Source: Gracilinanus agilis (lineage: Eukaryota). From it: a DNA stretch of 64,000 nucleotides. Positions 46,501 through 64,000 of the stretch are shown piece by piece (within the stretch, counting starts at the first letter, position 1; each line of letters opens with the position of its first letter). The stretch is taken from NCBI RefSeq assembly GCF_016433145.1, contig NC_058133.1:210206993-210270992 (forward strand), given 5' to 3'. The notes under the pieces are model-generated. The model worked only from the letters and a program-made list of their open reading frames with translations, ran no database searches and was not told where the DNA came from. The position numbers and the translations under genes are program-made.

Positions 46501-48030
46501 ATCTGACACTGAAATGTTTGTGTATCTCTCTCCCTACATTGTAAGCTCTTGAGGTCCTTAATTAAGGTACTGTGTCTCATGCTGTTCTCTGTTGCTATGC
46601 TGTAGTAGACAGTCAACAGCATTTGGGGGTGGTCTTCTGAGTATATAACCCCTCTTCCTACCTTCTGTCTATTTCCCACCCACCCAGATTACAAATTCAC
46701 TCTCTAAGCCCAACCTGTAAAGAGTCCATGTCAGGTGCAAGGAGTCCCAATGGGTTGGGCCCCTAATTGGTAAGTGATTCAGATTGAAAGCTATTTCTGT
46801 GATTTTTTTAATATGAATTTGTATATGTGAATAACCCACAGGGCTATGTTCAGAGTCATACAGGTCGTTTACAGAGCCTAGCAGAGGCTGAAGGCTTCTT
46901 ATAGACTTCATCTTATTTGCTAGTAAAACACAAAGGGGCAGATAATGGTCTCTGACTCAGCATCTCTGATGCTTTGAAAGTTGAAAGGTACTTTTGAGCC
47001 CTCAGACCCCTCCTCCCTCCAGGCAAGGAGCCATGATTGTGGGGAGGGAGTCTGGGCCTTGAGTACCATGTAGGGGAGTCACAGAAAGGGAGGGACCTAC
47101 CCGGATGTTGTCAAAGGAAGATTTGTTGGTGATATCATAGAGCAGAAGCAGGGCTAGAAGGGGAGAAAAAGAACACTGGGAATTTTGGGGTTCTGCTGTT
47201 GGGAGGGGGAGATGGGAATTTTTTATTAAGGGTGTAGGGCACAGAGACTTTTCGGAAAGGGGAAAGAGACCTACCCTGGGCATCCCGGTAATAAGCATGG
47301 GTGACGCTTCGGAATCTCTCCTGTCCTGCTGTGTCCCAAATCTAAGAGGAGACAGAGAAACAGTAAGAAGCTGGGAGAGGACAACCAGCTACTCCAGAGA
47401 AAAGAAAGCCCTTTTGAAGTGACTGAAATATAGGAAAGTGGGACTGGACCTCTTGCATGGGGCAAGGTGCAAGGTGGGATTCCATAAAGTGTAGAGGGCC
47501 ATGTGTCTGGCAGCCTGGGAGGGACCCAGTCCTTTTCAGAAGAAGGAGGAAAATACTCATTCACAGTCCTTGGATACTAACTACCTGATGATCTGGCCTC
47601 CTGGGATATTCCAGGCTACTTCTCAGGAGATCATCCCACCCTAGCCCTCTTGGTTCAACCATCTTGGTCCATTAGTCTCAGTAGTGACTTATCCAGAAGG
47701 GCTAGAAAGAGTAGGTAGGAAGTTATGGGTAAGGAAAACTAAACATGAGATGTTCCCTCAGCTTTGGAAGAAGTCACTTTTAAAGTGAAAAGGGGGATTG
47801 AACATGGAAGGCTTCTAAAAGATTTGTTCAAAAGCCTTGGTAGGGGGCAGCTGGGTAGCTCAGTGGATTGAGAGCCAGGCCTAGATATGGGAGGTCCTAA
47901 GTTCAAGTCTGGCCTCAGATACTTCCCAGCTGTGTGACCCTGGGCAAGTCACTTGACCCTCATTGCTTACCCTTACCACTCTTCTGCCTTGGAGCAATAC
48001 ATAGTATTGTCTCCAAGACTGAAGGTAAGG

Positions 48031-48064
<34 letters not shown>

Positions 48065-51000
48065 CTTGGTGGCAGGGCTAGAAAGAGAAACCCTAAATTG
48101 AGAGAAACCTATAATAGAGGCCAAGGAGCTTGAAAACTGTTATTTCTATTTAGACAAGAGCAATTTCCTCCCTCTCTAGGGCCCCACAGGAAGTTACCCC
48201 TAACAGAATACAACCACAACCCTTGAGAGGCCTCCTGTGGCTAAGTCCTATCAGCATAGTCAGCCTGGTCATTCCCCCTCCTTTTCCCATCCACCAACCC
48301 CAATCTTCTTACCTGCAGTTTCACTTTTGTGCCATCCACAGTCACCACCTTATTCTAGAAAAGAAATAGACAATCAGGGTGGAGGGAAACTGGGATGTTT
48401 GAGGGACTCAAGTTCCTCATCTTTTTAACATACTCTACTTAGAGGGATGTCATACCTTGATCCTTACCAGGGATCCTGGAGATTTGGAAAGACCTAGTAA
48501 CACTTCTGCTCAAACCCAGTCAAAGAAGTAGGAGGAACCCCAAGAGTAAAAGGGTTAGATGTAGTTCCCAGCTATACCTATTACAACATATTTTCTTTTT
48601 CTAACCTCTCCTCCCTAGTTCTTTGCTCTACCTTGGGACTAGAATGATGGAATATTGACTAAAGCACAGCAGAGTTGAAGGGACTAGTCCTAATTCTCAT
48701 TGAGTCAACAGCTAGAACACTCTTTATTCTTTCTCCAAATCTTATCTGCCACTCAAGAAAATATTCAGTTTTGTTACAGTGCCTTACACATAATAGTCAG
48801 TAAATGTTTATTGATATCGCCATGATTGTCTTCTAGAGACATGGTTCCAAAGATCCATTCTGTGAATTTTGACTCAACTGCTGCTTAGCCTAGGATCCAT
48901 TTATCTAATTAAGGAAGAGGGGACAGAGATACCACCATGGAGTTGTTATCCTGTTCCAGTTATCACCCATTCTCATTTCCTGTGACTGAAGACCTCTAGT
49001 AATTGCTTCCTCTTATTTAAACTCTCATAACAGAGTGGTTTGGGGTCTGAATTCAATGATCCAAGCATCTCATATCCCTGGGCTAGGGCAAACACAAATC
49101 TTAACTCCTTCCAGTCCTACTGGATAAGTTACTACTAAGACTGATGATCCAAGAGGGGAATTCTTAGAAGTTCACTTATGCCCTTTTCCATAGAAGGTGA
49201 ACTCATAAAAATTATGAACCATGTAATGTTCAATGTCTTCCCTGCAATGTCCAATTCTATTAGACCAGAAGTTCTATATGGTAATATTATGAATATTCTT
49301 TAACCTAATTAATGTCTAGCATAAAGCTTCATACACTGTAAACTCCATAAAGAACTGACTTGTTGAGGGAGTTGGGAAGCATTCCTTCCAGAGGGCAATG
49401 GGAAAGATAAAGTAGTAGATCAATAGACCCCTAGATAAAATGGCATTCTAATCAAAAGAAGAGGGAGAAAATCTTTCTTCTATTTTCTGTCCCCAGCAGG
49501 TAAATATTATGCTCATTATTCCCAGATTTCTCTTGCTAGAATAGAACTTAGGGATTGCATAGTTCCTACAATTCCACTAAGCAGTGAGAGCACAAGAACT
49601 GTGATGCAGAGATCTTCTCTGCCAAACCTCAACAGACAGGGAGAGAAGGAAGGAGGACAAGGATCCCACTGTCCATGAGCTGAGCTGTAGCCCCAAGGCC
49701 CCACCTGTCTGGAGAAGCCCATAGCCACCTCACCCGGAAGTCTATGCCGACAGTGGCTATGAAGGTCCCGGACAGGAAAGCCCCATCTTTGAAATGGATC
49801 AGGAAACAGGTTTTCCCAACGCCTGAGTCTCCCAACAGCATTACCTAGATGGGGCAGAGTTGGGTTAATAGGGTTAGGGAGGACATAAGAGCTAGAGGAT
49901 GAAGGAAAGGGAATGTACCTAGCAGGTGTTTGTAGGTAGTAGGTGTTTATTAGTTTCTTCTTGATTGACTGGGGGAATTCAGCTGTAAAAGGCACAGGAT
50001 TGTGGGATGGAAAGGGAAGATAGAAGCAAGGGATTTATTTTGCTAGGTTCCTTAGAGGAAAATGAGATGCAGTGGGCATCAACTTGAAAAAAAAAAAAGA
50101 AAATAGTCTTGATTTCATAAAAAAAAAAACCCTTCTTAATAATTAGAAGAATTGGCTGTTTTGGGAAGGAGAGAATTCTCTTGTCTTCAAACAAAGCCTG
50201 GATGATCATTTGCCTGATATATAGAGATTCTTGTGGGAAACGGAGTCCTGCCTGTTTTGCTACCCAGACCCACCCCCATAGTGCCTTCTAATTACCACTA
50301 GGAGATAGTCATTTACCATACCCAATCCTCCCCATCTGTCCTGAACTCTACTTCCTGGATTGAGGTTAGGTGAGGAGGAAACATAAAGCATGTGGTGGTA
50401 GAAAGGTAGGTAGCATAATGGATTCCTGAAGACAGGAGAATCTGGGTTCAAATATGACCTCAGATGCTTCCTAGCTGTGTGATCCTGGACAAGTCACTTA
50501 ACCCTATTGCCTAGCCCTTACTTCTCTTATACTTAGTATTGATTCTAAGACAGAAGGTAAGGGCTTAAAAAAAAAAAAGTACCTGCACCTGATCCTAGTA
50601 CTGGCTTTGCTACTAAATAGTTGTGGAACTCCAGGCTAGGTGGTTGACTTCTGTGGGGTATGCCTTCTCATCTGTAAAATGAGGACACTGGACTAGATGT
50701 TTGATAAGGTTTCTTTCAATGCAAATATGTGGTATCTACATTCTGTCAGAGAGGGATTGGCTAACAACCTGGTTGAGCACAGTTTATCCCTGAGGTGGAG
50801 GGAGTGTGTAGATAAGGGAGCTCATACATCTTAACTGCCTGTTCCCTGTCTCTCAGGCTTCTGGCATCCCTTGCTCCAGGAGGGAAGGGTGGTAGCTGCA
50901 TATGTGTATTTTATATATCATACTAGTTACCCTCCCAGGCAGGCAAATTCCACTAAATACATAAACAGGCCACCCAGAATCTCCACCTTCTAGGCAAACA

Positions 51001-52940
51001 CTTGAGCTAGGAGGGACTATGCTCTGTTATCAACCATGTTAGGTGTTGGGGCTCACTCACTTCCCAGGGCATTGGGCATCAGAATTTCTCCTTCCCTTCC
51101 CTAATCCCATTAAGTCTTTGATTCAATAACATACATTAAGACCCCCATGTGTGAGTCATTGGGAAGCTGGAGTCCCATTTCCCACCACAACCCAGGCACT
51201 GGAGCTTTGGAAACTTGAATAATTTCTTCCTAAATGGTCAAAACCTAATCTCAGGCCCCCATGTACCATATGCATCAGCTCCTGATAAATGGAATGTTTT
51301 CTGGTGGAGTGCTCTGGGATGGAAATATGAAAATCAAGGCAGGTTTCTAGGGAAAAGCCAGGGTTCTTTTCGGAGGTAACACAGGAGTTGCAACCTCCAA
51401 ATATATACTATGTCCCTTAAAGGGGCCAGAGAGCAGAGCAAGACAGGGGCTTAACACATCACCCCTTTCAAATGCTAAAGATCAGTCAAAATGGCCTTTG
51501 TGCTGGGCTTCCTGTTGTTCCTTCCATTCCACATTCTATCTCCAGATTCTATCTTTGTGCTGCCAGTTCCATAAGCTGGGAATGCTCTCTTGCTTCCCCT
51601 TAGAATCACTGGTTTATTTCAACATCCAGCTGATGTCCCACCTCCTAAAAGAAACCCATCCTCATCCCCCTTCACCTGCTACAAATCACCCTAAATTATC
51701 TGGGATTCATTTTGCATTTATTCTGCTGATTATATATGTTCATTTTGTTCCCCCACCCCCCAATTAAATACAAACTGATTGAAAGCAAAGGATATTCTTT
51801 TCTTTGTTTCTCCAGCAATTGGCAAAGTACTAGGCAGATTGCAGGGGCTTAATAAAAGCTTGCTGATTGATTGAGTGGGAGGACCTGGCACTTCCATCAT
51901 CTTTTTCTGAACACTTAGGGATAACTGAATGATGTCTTCCAGGACAGCAAAAAGGCTATATGAACTCAGTCATCTTCCGTTTGAGTTCTCCAAAGAAAAA
52001 TAGAAAATCTATATATTTCCTGATGCTTATTCTGGTGAACTGGAGACAGGAAGAGGAAAAGGATCAAGAACCTTTGATGAATGGGGGAAAGCACACCACT
52101 TGACTACTTTAGGATGTTTTTAACTGAAGAAACCCTTGGGAAAGAATGAGTAAGGTGGATGTCAGCAGGGAGGGTCAGAAACTGGCTCTGGTATTTAAAA
52201 CACAGACTGCAGCAAGTTACTTCCCCCTCACTAGGTCAGTTTCCTCCTTTGTAAAATGCGAGTGTGTCTAGATAATCTTGAAAGTCTTCTCTCCTCTCCC
52301 CAACCCTGCCAAATTCGGATCTCATTTACCAGGGCACTTCTGGCCCATAGAGCCATGGTACCCTCCTACCAAATCCGACACCCCTCTCCCCCCCCCCCCC
52401 CCACACCTAAATCCTCGACTTCTTAGAACCATCAGTCTGAGAGAAGCGCAGCGGAGCTTTCTAGGGAAGGAGTTCTGTCCAGAGATATTCTTTCTCGATC
52501 TCTGGAAGTTTTCCATGAAGGAGTGCTAGGTCCACTAGAATCCAGCTAGGCTCAAGAATTGAGAAGTAGGTGGGAAGCTCTTTAGATTAGGCTCTCTCTG
52601 CCATCACCTTCATTTGCCCAGTTAAGCAAACAAAGCCGGCACAGAAGTTTGGGAGGACCCTGGAGGCAGTTTCTCCTACTTCAACGTGATTATCCTAGCG
52701 TCAAGAAGAACTAGGATGCCTGGAGCGAGATGGGGCTAGGAATTGAGTCCGGATTGGTTCAATTCAGGTAGAAGAGGGAAATAGGGAGGAAGGAAGACTT
52801 AGGGAAGGAGCAGGTTTTGGCGGCGGGAGTTCGCAGGGCACACCGACCTTGCCTGCGAGATCGTAGCTTGGACTGCTGGGCGAGAATCGCTGCGGGGGCC
52901 CGCCACCCCGGGTGACAGTGGTGCCAAAGGGGCTCCTCAT
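43478..52940 (-). CDS. RAB37: Ras-related protein Rab-37, proximal-promoter isoform; join complement 52848-52940, 49734-49844, 48313-48354, 47275-47341, 47101-47153, 45707-45772, 43914-43970, 43743-43819, 43478-43586; 224 aa
   Basis: GDSGVGKT P-loop, [18 protein letters not shown] motifs; C-terminal SCCPFV prenylation motif; exon sizes 93/111/42/67/53/66/57/77/109 in frame; syntenic with SLC9A3R1. Confidence 0.97.
43743..43819 (-). CDS. RAB37: RAB37 exon 8
   Basis: [25 protein letters not shown]. Confidence 0.96.
43914..43970 (-). CDS. RAB37: RAB37 exon 7
   Basis: [19 protein letters not shown]. Confidence 0.96.
44220..44825. repeat. Perfect 76-bp inverted repeat (44220-44295 and 44750-44825), 454-bp spacer
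   Basis: Arms checked base by base, 76/76 reverse-complement identity. Confidence 0.95.
44600..44775 (+). mobile_element. L1 3'-end fragment
   Basis: GAAAGAATTTGAAGCTCAAAATT...TTTTTACATGTACTTGAGAAATATTCAATGAACTAAATAAAA resembles other L1 tails in the window (e.g. about 62760-62830). Confidence 0.6.
45034..45565 (+). mobile_element. Two SINE1-type copies (about 45034-45230, 45409-45565), followed by (TTTTG)n
   Basis: Repeat-family match. Confidence 0.8.
45707..45772 (-). CDS. RAB37: RAB37 exon 6
   Basis: [22 protein letters not shown]. Confidence 0.96.
47101..47153 (-). CDS. RAB37: RAB37 exon 5
   Basis: [18 protein letters not shown]. Confidence 0.96.
47275..47341 (-). CDS. RAB37: RAB37 exon 4 (switch II)
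   Basis: [22 protein letters not shown]. Confidence 0.97.
47843..48062 (+). mobile_element. Young SINE1-type copy with a 28-A tail
   Basis: TSD AAAAGCCTTGGT (47830-47841, 48059-48070). Confidence 0.92.
48313..48354 (-). CDS. RAB37: RAB37 exon 3
   Basis: [14 protein letters not shown]; ttctag acceptor, GTAAG donor. Confidence 0.96.
49734..49844 (-). CDS. RAB37: RAB37 exon 2 (P-loop to switch I)
   Basis: [37 protein letters not shown]; AG/GT flanks. Confidence 0.97.
50405..50578 (+). mobile_element. SINE1-type copy (RAB37 intron 1)
   Basis: Repeat-family match. Confidence 0.75.
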
Positions 52941-57006: not shown

Positions 57007-58420
57007 ACATCTATGCAATTACTTGGCCTCTCTAGGATCTCCTTGTCCCGGGAAAGGAAAAACCATACAACCGCAGGGAGGGTAGAAGATGGAAGTATAG
57101 GTGGCTTAGTAAAGAGTTCCTGGGCCAAACTGGGAACTGCAGGACTTAACGATAGAGATGACTCCATCCCATGTCACGAGAGCTCTTTGAGCGTAGGGAT
57201 CTATCTTTTGCCTCTTTTTCTATCCCTAGTGCTTGGCACATAGTAGGCCCTTAATAAATATTGATTGAAATGGAGCAATTACTTAACCAAGCCACCTGTC
57301 TTTGATAGTCCGAGTTATTACACTTAGTGAAAGAATTCTAAGGCCAGTCAGGGATGAGAGCCAAGGAGCAGCAAAGGCCCAAGACATATAGAGGAACAAA
57401 TCCTGATCATGTACCAGGAATTAAATAGACTGGGAAGATTTGGAGGAAAAGGAGTTGACTCCATTGTAATCCTGAATGCTTTACATTGGAAGGACTACAC
57501 AGGCTCCTGAAGGAGACTGGGTCAGAGAAGGAAGTATTTTGAAAGTTTATTAAAGTGAGTGAGAATCTTTTGTTTCTTTGATTAGTGAAATAAATCCTGA
57601 CTTCATGTGTTGTTAGCTTGAGTAAATTTCTCTGGAAGCTGAGGGCACTTTGCCCTTTGCTGTTGCCATTTTTTTTTTTTAAAACCCTTACCTTCCATCT
57701 TAAAATCAAAACTGTCTTTTGGTTCCAAGGCAGAAGAGCGGTAAGGGCTAGGCAATGGGGGTTAAGTGACTTCCCTAGGGTCACCCAGCTAGGAAGTGTC
57801 TGAGGACAGATTTGAACCCATCTAAAGCCCTGGCTCTCAATTCACTGAATCACCTAGCTTGCTCCCTATTGTTACCAAATTCTGATATTCCTAAGAGAAA
57901 ACCCATCCTGGAGGCAGGAACTGATAAGAGAAATACTTAGTGAGGATACTTAGGCCACTAGGTGGTGCAGTAGATAGAACATTGGGCCCCTTTGTCGGGA
58001 AGACTCACCCTAGTCATGGAACTGGTCCAGATTTGCCCTCAGACACTCCCTAAATGAATGACTCTTAATCACTCTGTCTTCTTCATTTTCCTCCTCATCT
58101 GTAAAATGGGGATAATAATGACACCTACCTCCTAGCATTATTATGAGGATAAAATGAGATATTATAAAGTGTTTCACACACATCGATGCATGATAGAAAT
58201 ACTAACTATTGTTATTTTTATTGTTGTTATCATCATCATTAATCCATCACAGACCTGAATGGAACCGTAGTTCTCACCATGCTCAGAGGTTGAAACCTCT
58301 TCACTATTTTTTTAACTCCAACCTTCCAAGTTAGAATTAATACTGTATATTGGTTCCAAGGTCGAAGAGTAGTAAGAACTAGTAATGGGGGTTAAGTGAC
58401 TTCTCCAAGGTCTTACAGCT
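56405..58420. mobile_element. SINE/MIR cluster: about 56405-56592(-), 56745-56855(+), 57673-57862(-), 57950-58220(+, MAR1/MIR-like), 58305-58420(-)
   Basis: Repeat-family match. Confidence 0.75.
56928..57006. repeat. (GA)n microsatellite
   Basis: Direct reading. Confidence 0.95.
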
Positions 58421-60111
58421 AGAAAACCTATCACTTTCATGGTGAATTACCAAAACCCTCACTACAACCTGGGGCTGGTGGCATTACCATGATTGTTGCT
58501 GTCAGCTTCATTGTTGTCAGCTGCACATTTTCATGGGTTCTTTGCAGTTTACCTCATAACTATGTGAAGTGGGCAGTATATTTATTCCTATTTTACAGAT
58601 GAGGAAACTGAGGATCAGAAAGGTAACATACCTTATCGATAGACATACAACTAGGAATTTGGGACTCAAGCCAAATCCAATGTTCTTTCTATTGTACAAG
58701 GCTGTTTCTCCATTATCTATAGAACATTTGGAACCATTAGAAAGCACTGGGAATAATCAATATCACAACAGGGCTTTGGTACACATTTGGTCAATCTCTT
58801 CTGATTTGTCTCCTAGGTAGTCACTTGAGTTTTTGTCTTTCACACATCCCCAACCCCGACTTTGCCCTCAGTCTGGAATCCCTTGGCATTGCTTCCTACT
58901 AAAACAAGAAAGAAACAATCTTATGTGAGTGTGAGCTTGGGGATGTAGGCATCATCGATCAGATTCCTAGGACACCCTGCTCTTTATCTTGGAATTGTTC
59001 CAAAGAATTGTGCTTTTGGCTTGAATGGGTTCCATCTTTCACTACTTTCTAAAATTATATAAAAATGCTCCAGAGAAGGGAGCAAGTCTCGTGTCAGAGA
59101 GAGAGAGAGTCCTGAATGAAACTCTTTCTTATAAGGCCAATGACATCACTCCTTTTGCATCTCTAATTGGTCAGCCTTAACTTCAGACCAGTCCTGAGTA
59201 CTAATTTCTGGGCACATTACCTGCCAACCCCTTCCAGAAGTTAGGATCCCAGATACCCACATGGCACTTCAGTCACACAACTCACTGGCATCCTGACTTA
59301 ATACACATGCATGGATAAGGGGTTACATTTATATTAATTTCACACAGTCCATTTTATAATCCCTCATCAACCAGCAAAACCTTTGATGATAATGGTGGAC
59401 TATGGCCCATTCAGATTCCTGTGGGATGACTGACAAACTTCTCCCTTTTCTGACCAAGAGACAATGAAAGAAATATAAAATTGGTACTTCCTTTGTTCCC
59501 ATCACCTCCAAAATCAGAATAATCCTACCAATTACTCTCAGAGTTCACAAAAGACCATCCCTTTCCTTTCACCTTAGGATCCATTTTTATAATCTTGTAA
59601 AACCAGTTCCATTTCTCTGACAATTTCAGAAGGCTGATCAATGACTTTTATCTCATACATGAATCAAAGAGGGAGAAATGAGAATATGCCAGAAATCACA
59701 TTTGACCTTTTCCTAACCCTGTAATTCTAGAGAAGAGTTCTCTGTTCCTGTTTAGGAAGAAAAGGGAGAAGAAAATCTCTTCTAAAGGTTTTCTAGGGAA
59801 GGTATGACTGACTACAAATTGCAAACAATGCTGGGTAGAAGTTGAGGATAAGGACAACATTTTATGGGACTAAAGCTCCTACTCTATTAACTTCCCATAA
59901 ACTTGCAGCCCAAGAAGCTATATATTATCCTGAACAATCTAGTGCTGTAGGACAATGCACATAGAAACGCATTTGAGTCCCTTGTTTTTTAGGTTCATGG
60001 GTCCATAGGAACTCATGTGACCATGCTAAATTCTGACCTTTTAAAATCTCAAACCACCAGGTTGAACTGCTGCCTGAAGTCCTGGAGCATAGCCAGCTAG
60101 TGAGTGCTTAC

Positions 60112-60222
60112 TGTGAATCCGATGCCCACGGTGGCTGAAAAGGAGCCCGGGATAAACTTGCCCTGGTCAAACTGAACCAGCAGAGATGTCTTCCCCACAC
60201 CGCTATCTCCCACCAGGATGGT
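60112..60222 (-). CDS. RAB37: RAB37 alternative (paralogous) exon 2 of a distal-promoter isoform
   Basis: Missed by the ORF track; ccttacag acceptor, GTAAGC donor, 111 nt, phase 0-0; [37 protein letters not shown], 21/37 identical to exon 2; joins exon 3 in frame. Confidence 0.92.
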
Positions 60223-61134
60223 CTGTAAGGATGCAAGAGTGAGAGATTAGGGATACTCAATATAATCCAGTCTTCTCTGAAGGAACAATGATTGAGAGAA
60301 CAAATTCTGTATACAAATACCCAATTTATTCACACAGATGATTAATGATTTCCTATTACAAAGTCTTATTTTCAAATATTGCGATATTCTCTCTTCGATT
60401 TTTCATATTCATGAAATTGGTTTGGGATTTTTTTTACCTTATCTTTGTTAGGCTTGACTTAAAGAAAAAATTGAATATGGCTTTTCTTTTACTTTCAGAA
60501 ATATTTTATTTACTATAGAGATTAATTGTACTATGAGTACATATAGTTCAAGTGCTTTTTTATAACCTATTTTTCTTTCTGAAACTGATTTAGAATGTTG
60601 ATCTCCTACTTTGACAATTTAATTAAAAGTTCAACCATTTCTTTTATGTTTTAAGTTTTATTGATATATTGACAACCACCTTTCTTTATTTCCTTAGCAA
60701 TAATATAATTATAAACTCATAGATTTGGAGCTGAAATGGACCTCAAAGGCCATCTAGTTCAATATCTTCATTTTACAAAACAGGAAACTGAAGCCCAAAA
60801 GTTGAACAACTTGTTTAAGGTCACTCAGGTAATAAAGAGCAGAGCTGAAATTCAGACTCAGGTCCTCTGACTACAAATCCAGTGCTTTCGTTTGCTAATT
60901 GTATATCAATTTTATTGATCTCAGGGTAAAAAAAGATGTATTTATTAATGCAATTTTATTTATTTTTCTTTTCAAGAAAAATTATTTCTTAGCTTGTATA
61001 ACGGGGATGGGGATTGATCAATCTGAACTGATCAGGAAAATCACTGATCAAGCTAAGCCCCATGCAACCCCTAATCCCCCATCAATTTATGAATTTGCAG
61101 AGAGAAGACCTTTGTTAGAAGGGGGCAGCAATCT

Positions 61135-61320
61135 AGAATTATCACCACAGTGTTATAAAACTGTGTGGCCCCTTAGATCCAGCAATGCTAATATACTATT
61201 AGGTCTATTTCCTAAAGCGATCAGGTAAAAAGAACCTATATGTTCTAAAATCTTTATAGCATCTCTCTTTGTGGTGGCAAAGGACTGGAAATTGAAGGGA
61301 TGCCCATCAATTGGATCTGC
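61135..61320 (+). mobile_element. L1 ORF2 3' fragment (decayed)
   Basis: GATCCAGCAAT...TTTATAGCATCTCTCTTTGTGGTGGCAAAGGACTGGAAATTGAAGGGATGCCCATCAATTGG is characteristic L1 ORF2-end sequence. Confidence 0.75.
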
Positions 61321-61601
61321 CTGGAGTTCCTCTGGCATGGAAGCTATTGTCCTCTGCTTCTGGAATTAGCAGGGATGTGATACATTCTTTATAATCACAT
61401 GCTACATTATTCGTATTCTAAACATCCATAGTTAATATAATAAATGCTTGATAATTGATTTGTGATCTGCACTTTCCCCCTTTGTACTTCCAAAAGGGAC
61501 TTTAGCAAGGAATATGAAGACCTGGAAATACAATGCTTAAAATTCCTGTCTTTTTGATCATATCGATAATTTTTTTCTGACCTCGAATATGATCATTTTT
61601 A

Positions 61602-61817
61602 TTTTATTATTATTTTTTTATAAAACCTTTACCTTCTGTCTTGGAATCAATAAACTGTATATTGGTTCCAAGACAGAAGAGTGGTAAGGGCTAGGCAATG
61701 GGGGTCAAGTGACTTGCCCAGGGCCACACAGTTGGGAAGTGTCTGAGGCCAGATTTGAACCTAGGACCTCCCATCTCTAGGCCTGACTCTCAATCCACTG
61801 AGATACCCAGCTGCCCC
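61602..61817 (-). mobile_element. SINE1-type copy with TSD
   Basis: 16-bp TSD AATATGATCATTTTTA (61586-61601, 61820-61835). Confidence 0.9.
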
Positions 61818-62101
61818 AAAATATGATCATTTTTAATGGATATTCCATGAATAGTTTAAAAATAATTAGATTCCTCACTTGATTCATTTCTCTATAGCTA
61901 TAAAATCAGGTTTCTACCACCCAGCTACCAGAAGCAATGGCAATTTATAATGTACACAGCATTTGAGACACTTGTGTTTGCTAATGGAAGCCTGAGATTG
62001 GAGATCTGAAATATTCCAGGCTTGGATCTCTTTCCTCAATCTTTTATTTCCTTTTCTGAGGAAAAAATCAGTGGCTAGTTTTCCCAAAAAATGGATGCTT
62101 A

Positions 62102-62292
62102 AGGGCATTTAGGTGCCATAGTGGATAGAGTACCAGGCCTGGAATTGGGAAGATCTGGGTTCAAATTTGAACTCAGATACTTCCTGACTGTGTGACTATG
62201 GACAAGTCTCTTAACCCTGTTTACTTGGTCCTTGCTTTTCTGTCTTAGAGTTGTTACCAAGACAGAAAGTAAGGGTTTAAAAAAAAAAAAAA
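62102..62292 (+). mobile_element. CORE-SINE copy with A tail
   Basis: Repeat-family match. Confidence 0.75.
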
Positions 62293-63680
62293 GATACTTC
62301 CAGGCTTAAATTTACTTTCACTTAATACTGTGTTTGAGACTTATTGATTAAACTGTCCCTGGTGGTTTCCCAGCTACCTATTAGGAAAAAGACTTCCTTA
62401 AGAGCTTGCTTCTTCAAGAAGATGTCCAGCAAAAAGATTACCCTGTAACTTGGGGACTAAAGTCATGCAGTGAGGGGCCAGGAACTCTGAGCCTTGCCAG
62501 TTATGATTTTGTTGGGAGTTGCTTGTATAGTGTTTAGAATGGTGCCTGGCACATAGTTAGTGCTAAATAAAAATTTATTAACTCCCACAAAGCTACTCAA
62601 AATAAGATATAAATCAGGTATGGGGCAGCTTTTTATTTTCTCTAGCAAAGAAACTGCTTAAGATGCATAGATTCATGGTCACCAGGTATAGATATAGGAA
62701 ATTTAAAACACTCAATTTGTAGAAAACAGGATCTTAGGAAGGAGGAAGAACAGGGAAGGCGGGAGAGAATTTGGAACTCAACATTTTAGAAAATGAATGT
62801 TAAAAATTGTTTTTATATGTAGTTGGGAAAAAAGAAAAACTTTTTTTTTAAAGAAGGAAATAGAACAAGAATTCCATGGGACCATTGGAAAGAGAAGGAC
62901 AGGGTCCTTGGAGGATTAGGTTTGAGGCTGATAGGGATGAGGCAATATGGAAGTGTTATCCAGGGAAGGAAGCTTTATTTTATACAATTTGAACCTTATA
63001 ATCATAGGACTTCTGAGTGGGGCCATAGGGAAGTAGATTGTCATTCCCTTTCTACAAGCAATAGTAATGTTGATTGGATTATTTTTCTGTCTGCAAGAGG
63101 TGGAAAGAAGAGTGGTCATATGGATGGTGGTAAGGTGTGAGCAAGATGCTCATATTGGCTAGACCAAGATGTCATGGTGGGATGGCCAGATGGGATGACG
63201 TTCCAACTGGGATTTGCTATTTATTTATAGAAAATTGAAGTGAGGTTTGACTTACTCTCCAATCATATACAGACCCTTGCTTTAATTGTCACAAAATATT
63301 CAGTAGTTATTAAGTGAACAAAGGAGAAAGGATGAGTATGAGAGAGTGAGAATAGATCAGAGATTGTGTACAGAGAACAGTGGTCAAAGATTGTGATGTG
63401 AGAAAAAACCTCTGAGTGTGGATCCTTGAAGCTAATTCTTTTCTGGGTACTCAGGGGTTGGTTTCTAAGGCTTGGCCAAGGCAAGTCATCCCTGCCAGTG
63501 GATCTGGCCAGAGCTCTGGATCTTAGAATTACTAATTGCAGGAGGTGGGCAATGCTAAACAGATATTAAATTTGGTCTTATAATATGTATCTGAGTTGGC
63601 ATTTTCTGAGATACTTCCACTAACACTGAAGGCGTAAGAGGGTACTTGAAGCCTAGTGGATTTAGATCTTGGAATGTGTT

Positions 63681-63682
<2 letters not shown>

Positions 63683-63728
<46 letters not shown>
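63683..63728. repeat. (GT)n microsatellite
   Basis: Direct reading. Confidence 0.95.
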
Positions 63729-63729
<1 letters not shown>

Positions 63730-64000
63730 TGAGTCTCATCTGTCTATAGGGAATTATAGTTGTCTTAACAAAAGGCAGAGAGAAGGACCTGTAGGGGAGA
63801 GAGCCATACCAAGCATAAAATATAGTCACGCCTAGCATGGAATGGAGGAAGAGGATAAGACTTTTCTCTAGAAGTTCTTACATTTCTTACATTTTAGTGG
63901 ATTGCTTCCTCTCTCTGGGGGTCCTTTCCATATCGCACTGTAGAAGTTCTTGGGCAAAGCATTATGCTATGAAACTCCCTGAACACAAAGTTCTTTTTGT

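What the first reader, a model, noticed from the sequence alone, without database searches (positions are those of the whole stretch)
60112..60222. Duplicated RAB37 exon 2: one gene, two G-domain front ends with different switch I
Seen: an intact 111-nt, phase 0-0 exon with strong splice sites, 7 kb upstream of the proximal promoter, 21/37 identical to exon 2. It keeps the P-loop (GDSGVGKT) but changes switch I from [10 protein letters not shown] to FSATVGIGFT. Known: I recall a human RAB37 isoform with this same exon driven from a distal promoter, and the RabF1 (IGVDF-like) motif contacts effectors, GDI and REP. Inference: retention in both marsupials and eutherians implies selection for a promoter-chosen Rab with altered effector/GDI/REP recognition. 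That would be a little-studied effector switch in a secretory Rab. Its first exon is not in this window.
Basis: partly seen in the sequence, partly recalled or inferred. Interest (0 to 1): 0.72.

Follow-up and report, generated by a model that had tools for sequence, protein, structure and literature searches.

The report
Known ancient alternative RAB37 exon
The 111-base exon is real and under very strong selection, but it is the marsupial copy of an ancient, already published and already annotated alternative exon of RAB37, so it is not new.

Summary
On the minus strand, 60222..60112 is an open 111-nt, phase 0-0 exon with AG and GTAAGC borders. It lies 7.2 kb upstream of the proximal RAB37 start codon and is 21/37 identical to exon 2 (49844..49734). 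It keeps the P-loop and the switch I Thr, and changes the RabF1 motif from IGIDF to IGIGF.

It is a conserved coding exon, not a decaying duplicate. All 37 residues are identical in fish, birds, rodents and other marsupials. Every nucleotide difference is synonymous: 3 against Dromiciops and 12-15 against mouse or rat. A tree splits alt-type from canonical-type exons of vertebrates and arthropods with 100/100 support.

It is already known. Martinez-Gomez et al. 2021 (PMC8373072, Fig. 5C) describe this RAB37 event, trace it back to Drosophila and propose different binding partners. RefSeq models in Sarcophilus, Sminthopsis and Dromiciops contain the exon.

Two amendments:
- The promoter alone does not choose the exon. 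Intron-less RNA contigs show an alt-only mRNA in rat and an mRNA with both copies in mouse.
- The first exon lies about 70 kb upstream in Dromiciops, so outside this window.

The proposed effect on GDI, REP or effector binding remains an inference.

The parts
60112..60222 (-). Alternative (alt-type) copy of RAB37 exon 2. It is 111 nt, phase 0-0, and encodes beta1, the P-loop, alpha1, switch I and the RabF1 motif (IGIGF).
   Evidence: All 37 residues are identical in fish, bird, rodent and marsupial proteins. Only synonymous differences are seen.
60223..60252 (-). Acceptor region of the alt exon: pyrimidine tract ending in CAG, with a CTAAT branch-like site.
   Evidence: 27/30 bases are identical in Dromiciops.
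60102..60111 (-). Donor of the alt exon (GTAAGCACTC).
   Evidence: 10/10 bases are identical in Dromiciops.
59992..60101 (-). Intronic block just downstream of the alt exon. It is 90-100% identical between this genome and Dromiciops, against about 70% for the surrounding intron. Possibly a splicing control element.
   Evidence: It is not conserved in Mus pahari. It shows no complementarity to the introns around exon 2 beyond shuffled controls.
52848..52940 (-). Coding part of the proximal exon 1: ATG at 52940, 31 codons, followed by a GT donor. This is the proximal-promoter start of the canonical isoform.
   Evidence: It matches the N-termini of marsupial RAB37 models.
49734..49844 (-). Canonical exon 2, 111 nt, phase 0-0, with RabF1 motif IGIDF.
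   Evidence: It is 37/37 identical to the Dromiciops exon.
48313..48354 (-). Exon 3, the shared acceptor for the alt exon or for exon 2.
   Evidence: Alt-only proteins join the alt exon directly to this sequence, which begins NKVV.
47275..47341 (-). Exon 4, carrying the WDTAGQE switch II/RabF motifs. It is shared by all isoforms.

Best explanation
The stretch is the marsupial orthologue of the alt-type copy of a tandemly duplicated RAB37/Rab26 exon. The duplication arose before protostomes and deuterostomes split.

How it is used (inferred from related species): transcripts start at a distal first exon. In Dromiciops that exon lies 70.8 kb upstream of the alt exon, so here it lies outside the window. 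The transcripts splice into 60222, leave at 60112 and, in the alt-only form, join exon 3 at 48354. That skips proximal exon 1 and exon 2. The product is a Rab37 of about 218 aa in which beta1, the P-loop, alpha1, switch I and RabF1 come from the alt copy.

What changes in the protein: the nucleotide-binding residues are kept (GxxxxGKT, the switch I Thr, the RabF1 Phe). A conserved set of residues differs, most notably RabF1 Asp to Gly and the following Arg to Thr.

Shown here: the anatomy, the orthology, the purifying selection, and the existence of alt-only and both-copy mRNAs in rodents.

Inferred: that this genome splices in the same way, and that the isoform has different partner recognition (effectors, GEF, GDI or REP).
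For: - Anatomy.
- Family: Pfam Ras, and Rab26 as the best solved-structure match for both copies.
- Conservation: 128 cluster representatives match the exon at E <= 1e-10, and 39 of the best 150 are 37/37 identical. Named examples are carp, chicken, killdeer, beaver and Betta.
- Marsupial annotation: alt-only models in Sarcophilus and Sminthopsis (218 aa) and Dromiciops. The Sarcophilus model maps exon by exon onto the window.
- Selection: 3/111 differences against Dromiciops and 12-15/111 against rat or mouse, all synonymous. Introns are about 70-75% identical.
- Single old origin: ALT and CAN exons split with 100/100 support. Type-specific residues are conserved at >=90% at exon positions 1, 2, 13, 35 and 37.
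- Real mRNAs: intron-less RNA-assembly contigs encode the alt-only 216-aa protein in rat.
- Distal first exon: located in Dromiciops.
- Literature: PMC8373072 and PMC9714508.
Against:
- The look-up of sequencing runs found 20 runs in 11 studies holding the exon, but none is on record as RNA.
- Many predicted proteins, and three mouse RNA contigs, carry both copies in tandem. Exclusive use is therefore not strict, and the share of alt-only product is unknown.
- AlphaFold models were of low confidence over the alt-exon region, so they add no structural support.
Confidence: 0.9

Rival explanations
1. The exon is mostly included together with exon 2. The 253-255 aa both-copy product, or a non-productive mRNA, would then be the main output of the distal promoter. 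The alt copy would act only as an N-terminal extension or decoy, not as part of a working G domain.
For: - 110 of the 143 proteins classified carry both copies in frame. That ranking favours two-copy proteins, because they score twice.
- Three independent intron-less mouse contigs encode the 253-aa form.
- Both-copy models are annotated in Vombatus and Dromiciops.
- Both exons are 111 nt, so including both keeps the reading frame.
Against: - Conservation of exactly the G-domain residues (P-loop, switch I Thr, RabF1 Phe) and of the alt-specific surface residues for over 600 My is hard to explain for a mere extension.
- Alt-only mRNAs exist in rat. A 216-aa coding RAB37 transcript, the length of the alt-only form in other eutherians, is seen in human long-read data (PMC9714508).
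- The AlphaFold model of the both-copy protein has pLDDT below 50 over residues 1-97, so no ordered double module is predicted. This is a weak argument.
Confidence: 0.08
2. The exon is a decaying or unused pseudo-exon: a duplicate that merely still looks intact.
For: No RNA junction evidence was obtained in this genome.
Against: - There are no nonsynonymous changes against Dromiciops, rat or mouse, while 3-15 synonymous changes have accumulated.
- The protein sequence is identical from fish to marsupial.
- The splice sites are conserved.
- The exon is part of annotated isoforms in three marsupials.
Confidence: 0.02

Closest known systems
RAB37 tandem exon duplication-derived substitution (Martinez-Gomez, Pozo, Walsh, Abascal, Tress, NAR 2021, PMC8373072, Fig. 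5C)
   Same: It is the same gene, the same pair of homologous exons, the same conclusion that the event is ancient (with an orthologous event in Drosophila), and the same proposal that the differing surface patch lets the isoforms bind different proteins.
   Different: That paper works from the human GENCODE annotation. Here the exon is located in a marsupial genome, the nucleotide-level selection is measured against Dromiciops and rodents, and mRNAs with both copies are documented.
RefSeq models 'ras-related protein Rab-37 isoform X2' of Sarcophilus harrisii, Sminthopsis crassicaudata and Dromiciops gliroides (P0262, P0271, P0304)
   Same: The alt exon is 37/37 identical and is joined directly to exon 3. 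The distal first exon ends in the motif NEELLHK.
   Different: The window's own protein differs from each of them at a few residues in other exons. It is therefore another marsupial, for which no exact protein was found.
Rab1 D44N, the laboratory 'GDI-free' mutant (as cited in PMC3295573)
   Same: The change is at the Asp of the RabF1 motif IGxDF, the position where the alt exon has Gly. That D44 of Rab1B is this Asp rests on my own residue count, not on a tool result.
   Different: It is an engineered point mutant (Asn) in Rab1. The alt exon is a natural, conserved Gly with about 15 further differences. Whether it loses GDI or REP binding is untested.
Classical mutually exclusive homologous exon pairs (for example in tropomyosins and ATP2B genes, listed in PMC8373072)
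   Same: These are tandem duplicates of equal length and phase that substitute for one another in the protein.
   Different: Here the proximal promoter and exon 1 sit between the two copies, so the choice combines an alternative promoter with skipping of exon 2. The exclusion is leaky, since both-copy and exon 2-less forms exist.

Membership tests
Tandem exon duplication-derived substitution of RAB37/Rab26 | Two neighbouring homologous exons of equal length and phase in one gene | tested here: met
   Both exons are 111 nt and phase 0-0. They are 21/37 identical and lie 10.3 kb apart on the minus strand.
Tandem exon duplication-derived substitution of RAB37/Rab26 | The exon is orthologous to the alt-type copy of other species, not an independent duplicate | tested here: met
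   The tree of 23 ALT and 23 CAN exon peptides from vertebrates and arthropods splits by type with 100/100 support. Against the marsupial alt exon, the Strigamia and Argiope alt copies are 35/37 identical, while their canonical copies score 19-21/37.
Tandem exon duplication-derived substitution of RAB37/Rab26 | The copies substitute for each other in mature mRNA | tested here: inconclusive
   Alt-only intron-less contigs exist in rat, but both-copy contigs exist in mouse.
Tandem exon duplication-derived substitution of RAB37/Rab26 | Purifying selection on the alternative copy | tested here: met
   There are 0 nonsynonymous changes against 3 (Dromiciops) and 12-15 (rodents) synonymous changes.
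Rab GTPase G domain (Pfam PF00071 Ras) | P-loop GxxxxGK[ST] and the switch I Thr | tested here: met
   GDSGVGKT and the Thr of ATVG are present in the alt exon. The Pfam Ras match has E = 3.2e-7, above the curated cut-off.
Rab GTPase G domain (Pfam PF00071 Ras) | RabF1 motif IGxDF | tested here: not met
   The alt exon reads IGIGF. Gly replaces the Asp in 96% of 54 bilaterian sequences, while the canonical copy has Asp in 100%. This is a conserved departure within the family, not a reason to exclude the protein from the Rabs.
Rab GTPase G domain (Pfam PF00071 Ras) | Remaining G motifs and the C-terminal prenylation cysteines, supplied by the shared exons | tested here: met
   The window holds WDTAGQE, ETSAK, and GNK at the end of an exon (the D of the NKxD motif comes from the next exon). 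A C-terminal CC motif is also present.

The most novel reading that the evidence does not exclude
The alt isoform may be a natural 'GDI-free' Rab. The conserved Asp-to-Gly change in RabF1 sits at the residue whose mutation in Rab1 abolishes GDI binding. It would weaken GDI and perhaps REP binding, so the cell types that use the distal promoter would make a Rab37 that stays on membranes and cycles differently.

A second, less likely twist is that the in-frame both-copy mRNA yields a Rab with two competing N-terminal modules.
Probability: 0.25. Interest if true: 0.55.

Novelty: already known. Interest (0 to 1): 0.2.

Why it matters
For the scan this is a correct call on a real feature that is already published and annotated, so it adds no new biology. 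The open point is functional. Nobody appears to have compared the two Rab37 isoforms biochemically. The alt copy is at least as conserved across Bilateria as the canonical one, and it carries a fixed Gly at a RabF1 position known to matter for GDI binding. That gives a concrete, testable hypothesis about isoform-specific Rab cycling in secretory cells.

Tried and rejected
No letters of 58086-58131 were sent to any tool afterwards. In scripts they were replaced by N or left out of the ranges.

2. The look-up of sequencing runs. 20 runs in 11 studies hold at least 8 of the 9 sampled words, and several are very small runs, which hints at RNA. None is on record as RNA, so this is not counted as evidence of expression.

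3. First exon. A scan of 60223-64000 found nothing credible. tblastn with the Sarcophilus N-terminus also found nothing there.

4. Selector or docking RNA structure. RNAduplex of the conserved downstream block against the introns around exon 2 gave -75 and -70 kcal/mol. Shuffled controls gave -69 +/- 5 and -64 +/- 6, so there is no signal.

5. AlphaFold2.
   - Both-copy protein (P0283, 54-row alignment): pLDDT below 50 for residues 1-97.
   - Alt-only protein (P0262, 25-row alignment): pLDDT below 50 for residues 37-59.
   - Both are uninformative. No fold search was made on such weak models.

6. DNA of other marsupials. Sarcophilus was not on record and the Vombatus file was too large, so only Dromiciops was usable.

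7. Step left out. Exons were searched singly, by reference.

8. No contig taken for human was fetched or compared. Human facts come only from the cited papers.

Full report
**Observation**

The exon lies on the minus strand at 60222..60112. Upstream is a pyrimidine-rich tract (16 of 20 bases) ending in CAG, with a CTAAT branch-like site. Downstream is GTAAGC.

It translates in phase 0-0 into 37 codons without a stop and carries the P-loop GDSGVGKT. The canonical exon 2 is at 49844..49734, with the same length and phase. Exon 3 starts at 48354. The proximal exon 1 has its ATG at 52940 and its donor after 52848, so the alt exon is 7.2 kb upstream of the proximal start.

The two copies share 21 of 37 residues (by hand). 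Each copy alone matches Pfam Ras above the curated cut-off. Each matches Rab26 (2g6b) best among solved structures, with the one-residue-longer loop typical of Rab26/37. 'Strong' is fair for the acceptor; the donor is a 6/9 consensus match.

**What it is**

A search of 1.84 billion cluster representatives with the 37-residue exon found 128 proteins at E <= 1e-10. Of the best 150, 39 carry all 37 residues unchanged. Named examples with the identical exon are RAB37 of carp, chicken, killdeer, beaver, Betta and Etheostoma.

A word search with a full-length alt-isoform protein, scored on the alt-exon part, returned 609 hits. Both exon types occur in mammals, birds, reptiles, amphibians, ray-finned fish, lamprey, hagfish, a spider, a centipede, many insects and Drosophila Rab26.

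A maximum-likelihood tree was built from 23 alt-type and 23 canonical-type exon peptides from these taxa. It separates the two types with 100/100 support. The duplication is therefore single and older than the protostome-deuterostome split.

Across 54 bilaterian sequences the alt copy is at least as conserved as the canonical one. Five positions are fixed differently in the two types:
- position 1: T in alt, V in canonical
- position 2: I in alt, M in canonical
- position 13: S in alt, C in canonical
- position 35: G in alt, D in canonical
- position 37: T in alt, R in canonical

**Marsupials and selection**

RefSeq already has alt-only RAB37 models of 218 aa for Sarcophilus harrisii, Sminthopsis crassicaudata and Dromiciops gliroides. 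The Sarcophilus model maps exon by exon onto the window. A few residues differ outside the alt exon, so the window is a different marsupial.

The Dromiciops locus (L007) is collinear with the window. Its alt exon differs at 3 of 111 bases (window 60181, 60148, 60139). All three are third codon positions and all are synonymous. The donor is 10/10 and the acceptor region 27/30 identical, while the surrounding intron is about 70-75% identical.

Against rat and mouse there are 12-15 differences, again all synonymous. If 15 changes fell at random, roughly three quarters would alter the protein. This estimate is my inference, not a tool result.

**How it is used**

In Dromiciops the first coding exon of the alt isoform is 25 codons long, ends in the motif NEELLHK and is followed by GTAAGA. 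It lies 70.8 kb upstream of the alt exon, and a CD300-like gene sits on the other strand in between. The window has only 3.8 kb upstream of the exon, and nothing like that first exon is in it.

Spliced products are directly visible in rodents. Two intron-less contigs from public run assemblies encode the 216-aa alt-only protein of rat. Three encode a 253-aa mouse protein in which the alt exon is followed in frame by exon 2. Both-copy models are annotated very widely, including Vombatus and Dromiciops. Marsupial 187-aa models join exon 1 directly to exon 3.

The alt exon can only be reached from the distal promoter. The final choice also needs exon 2 to be skipped, and that skipping is leaky. 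'Promoter-chosen' is therefore only half the mechanism.

I found no RNA pairing that could enforce exclusion. A 120-nt block just downstream of the alt exon is 90-100% conserved between the two marsupials but not in Mus pahari. It may be a lineage-specific splicing element.

**Likely function**

The alt copy keeps what a G domain needs from this segment: the P-loop, the switch I Thr and the RabF1 Phe. It changes surface residues of alpha1, the switch I loop and RabF1.

REP binds GDP-bound Rabs through the RabF1-RabF4 motifs (PMC5902227). Rab1 D44N loses GDI binding yet is still prenylated and membrane-bound (PMC3295573). By my own count of the Rab1B sequence, D44 is the Asp of IGVDF, the position where the alt exon has its conserved Gly. 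This mapping is my own knowledge, not a tool result.

Altered recognition by GDI, REP or effectors is thus a reasonable hypothesis, but nothing here tests it. AlphaFold models of the alt-only and both-copy proteins were of low confidence exactly over this region and add nothing.

**Comparison with what is known**

Martinez-Gomez et al. [quoted passage not shown] They map the event on Rab26 (Fig. 5C) and state that the differing residues form a surface patch likely to let the isoforms bind different proteins. They also report an orthologous event in Drosophila.

A survey of small-GTPase splicing reports human RAB37 coding transcripts of 182, 186, 191, 216 and 223 aa. One transcript set is high in cerebellum and another is broadly expressed elsewhere (PMC9714508).

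- the coordinates in this genome;
- nucleotide-level evidence of selection within marsupials and against rodents;
- an explicit tree;
- the note that both-copy mRNAs are real.

**Limits**

Those places were not sent to any tool afterwards.

The look-up of sequencing runs shows the exon in 20 runs of 11 studies, several very small, but none is recorded as RNA. I do not count this as proof of expression.

No contig taken for human was used.

**Verdict**

The finding is real, correctly read and under strong selection, but already known. Interest is low. The only part with some promise is the untested idea that the conserved RabF1 Gly makes a GDI-poor Rab37 isoform.

Noticed in passing
window 59992-60101 (minus strand): An intronic block directly downstream of the alt exon is 90-100% identical to Dromiciops, against about 70% for the neighbouring intron. 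It is not recognisably conserved in Mus pahari. It may be a marsupial-lineage splicing control element.
   Followed up: partly
L004, L005, L006 (mouse RNA-assembly contigs); P0283 and P0285 (marsupial models): In-frame mRNAs and models carry the alt exon and exon 2 in tandem (253-255 aa), which would duplicate beta1, the P-loop, alpha1 and switch I. What becomes of such a protein is unknown; the AlphaFold model is disordered there.
   Followed up: partly
P0273, P0275, P0272, P0277 (187/186-aa models): Annotated RAB37 isoforms in marsupials and a bat join exon 1 directly to exon 3 and so lack the P-loop altogether. Exon 2 therefore seems to be intrinsically skippable.
   Followed up: no
L007 38923-49138 and L003 26881-44243: A CD300-like gene (V-set and SIT domains) lies on the opposite strand inside the long intron between the distal first exon and the alt exon. 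This is seen in Dromiciops, Vombatus and Mus pahari alike.
   Followed up: no
window 61693-61839 and 62086-62222: Two interspersed-repeat segments each hit dozens of places, in both orientations, in the 90-kb Dromiciops locus at about 70-79% identity. They are probably a marsupial SINE family.
   Followed up: no
window 52389-52412 (minus strand): A run of about 20 G lies in intron 1, just downstream of the proximal exon 1.
   Followed up: no
It was left alone and was not examined.
   Followed up: no
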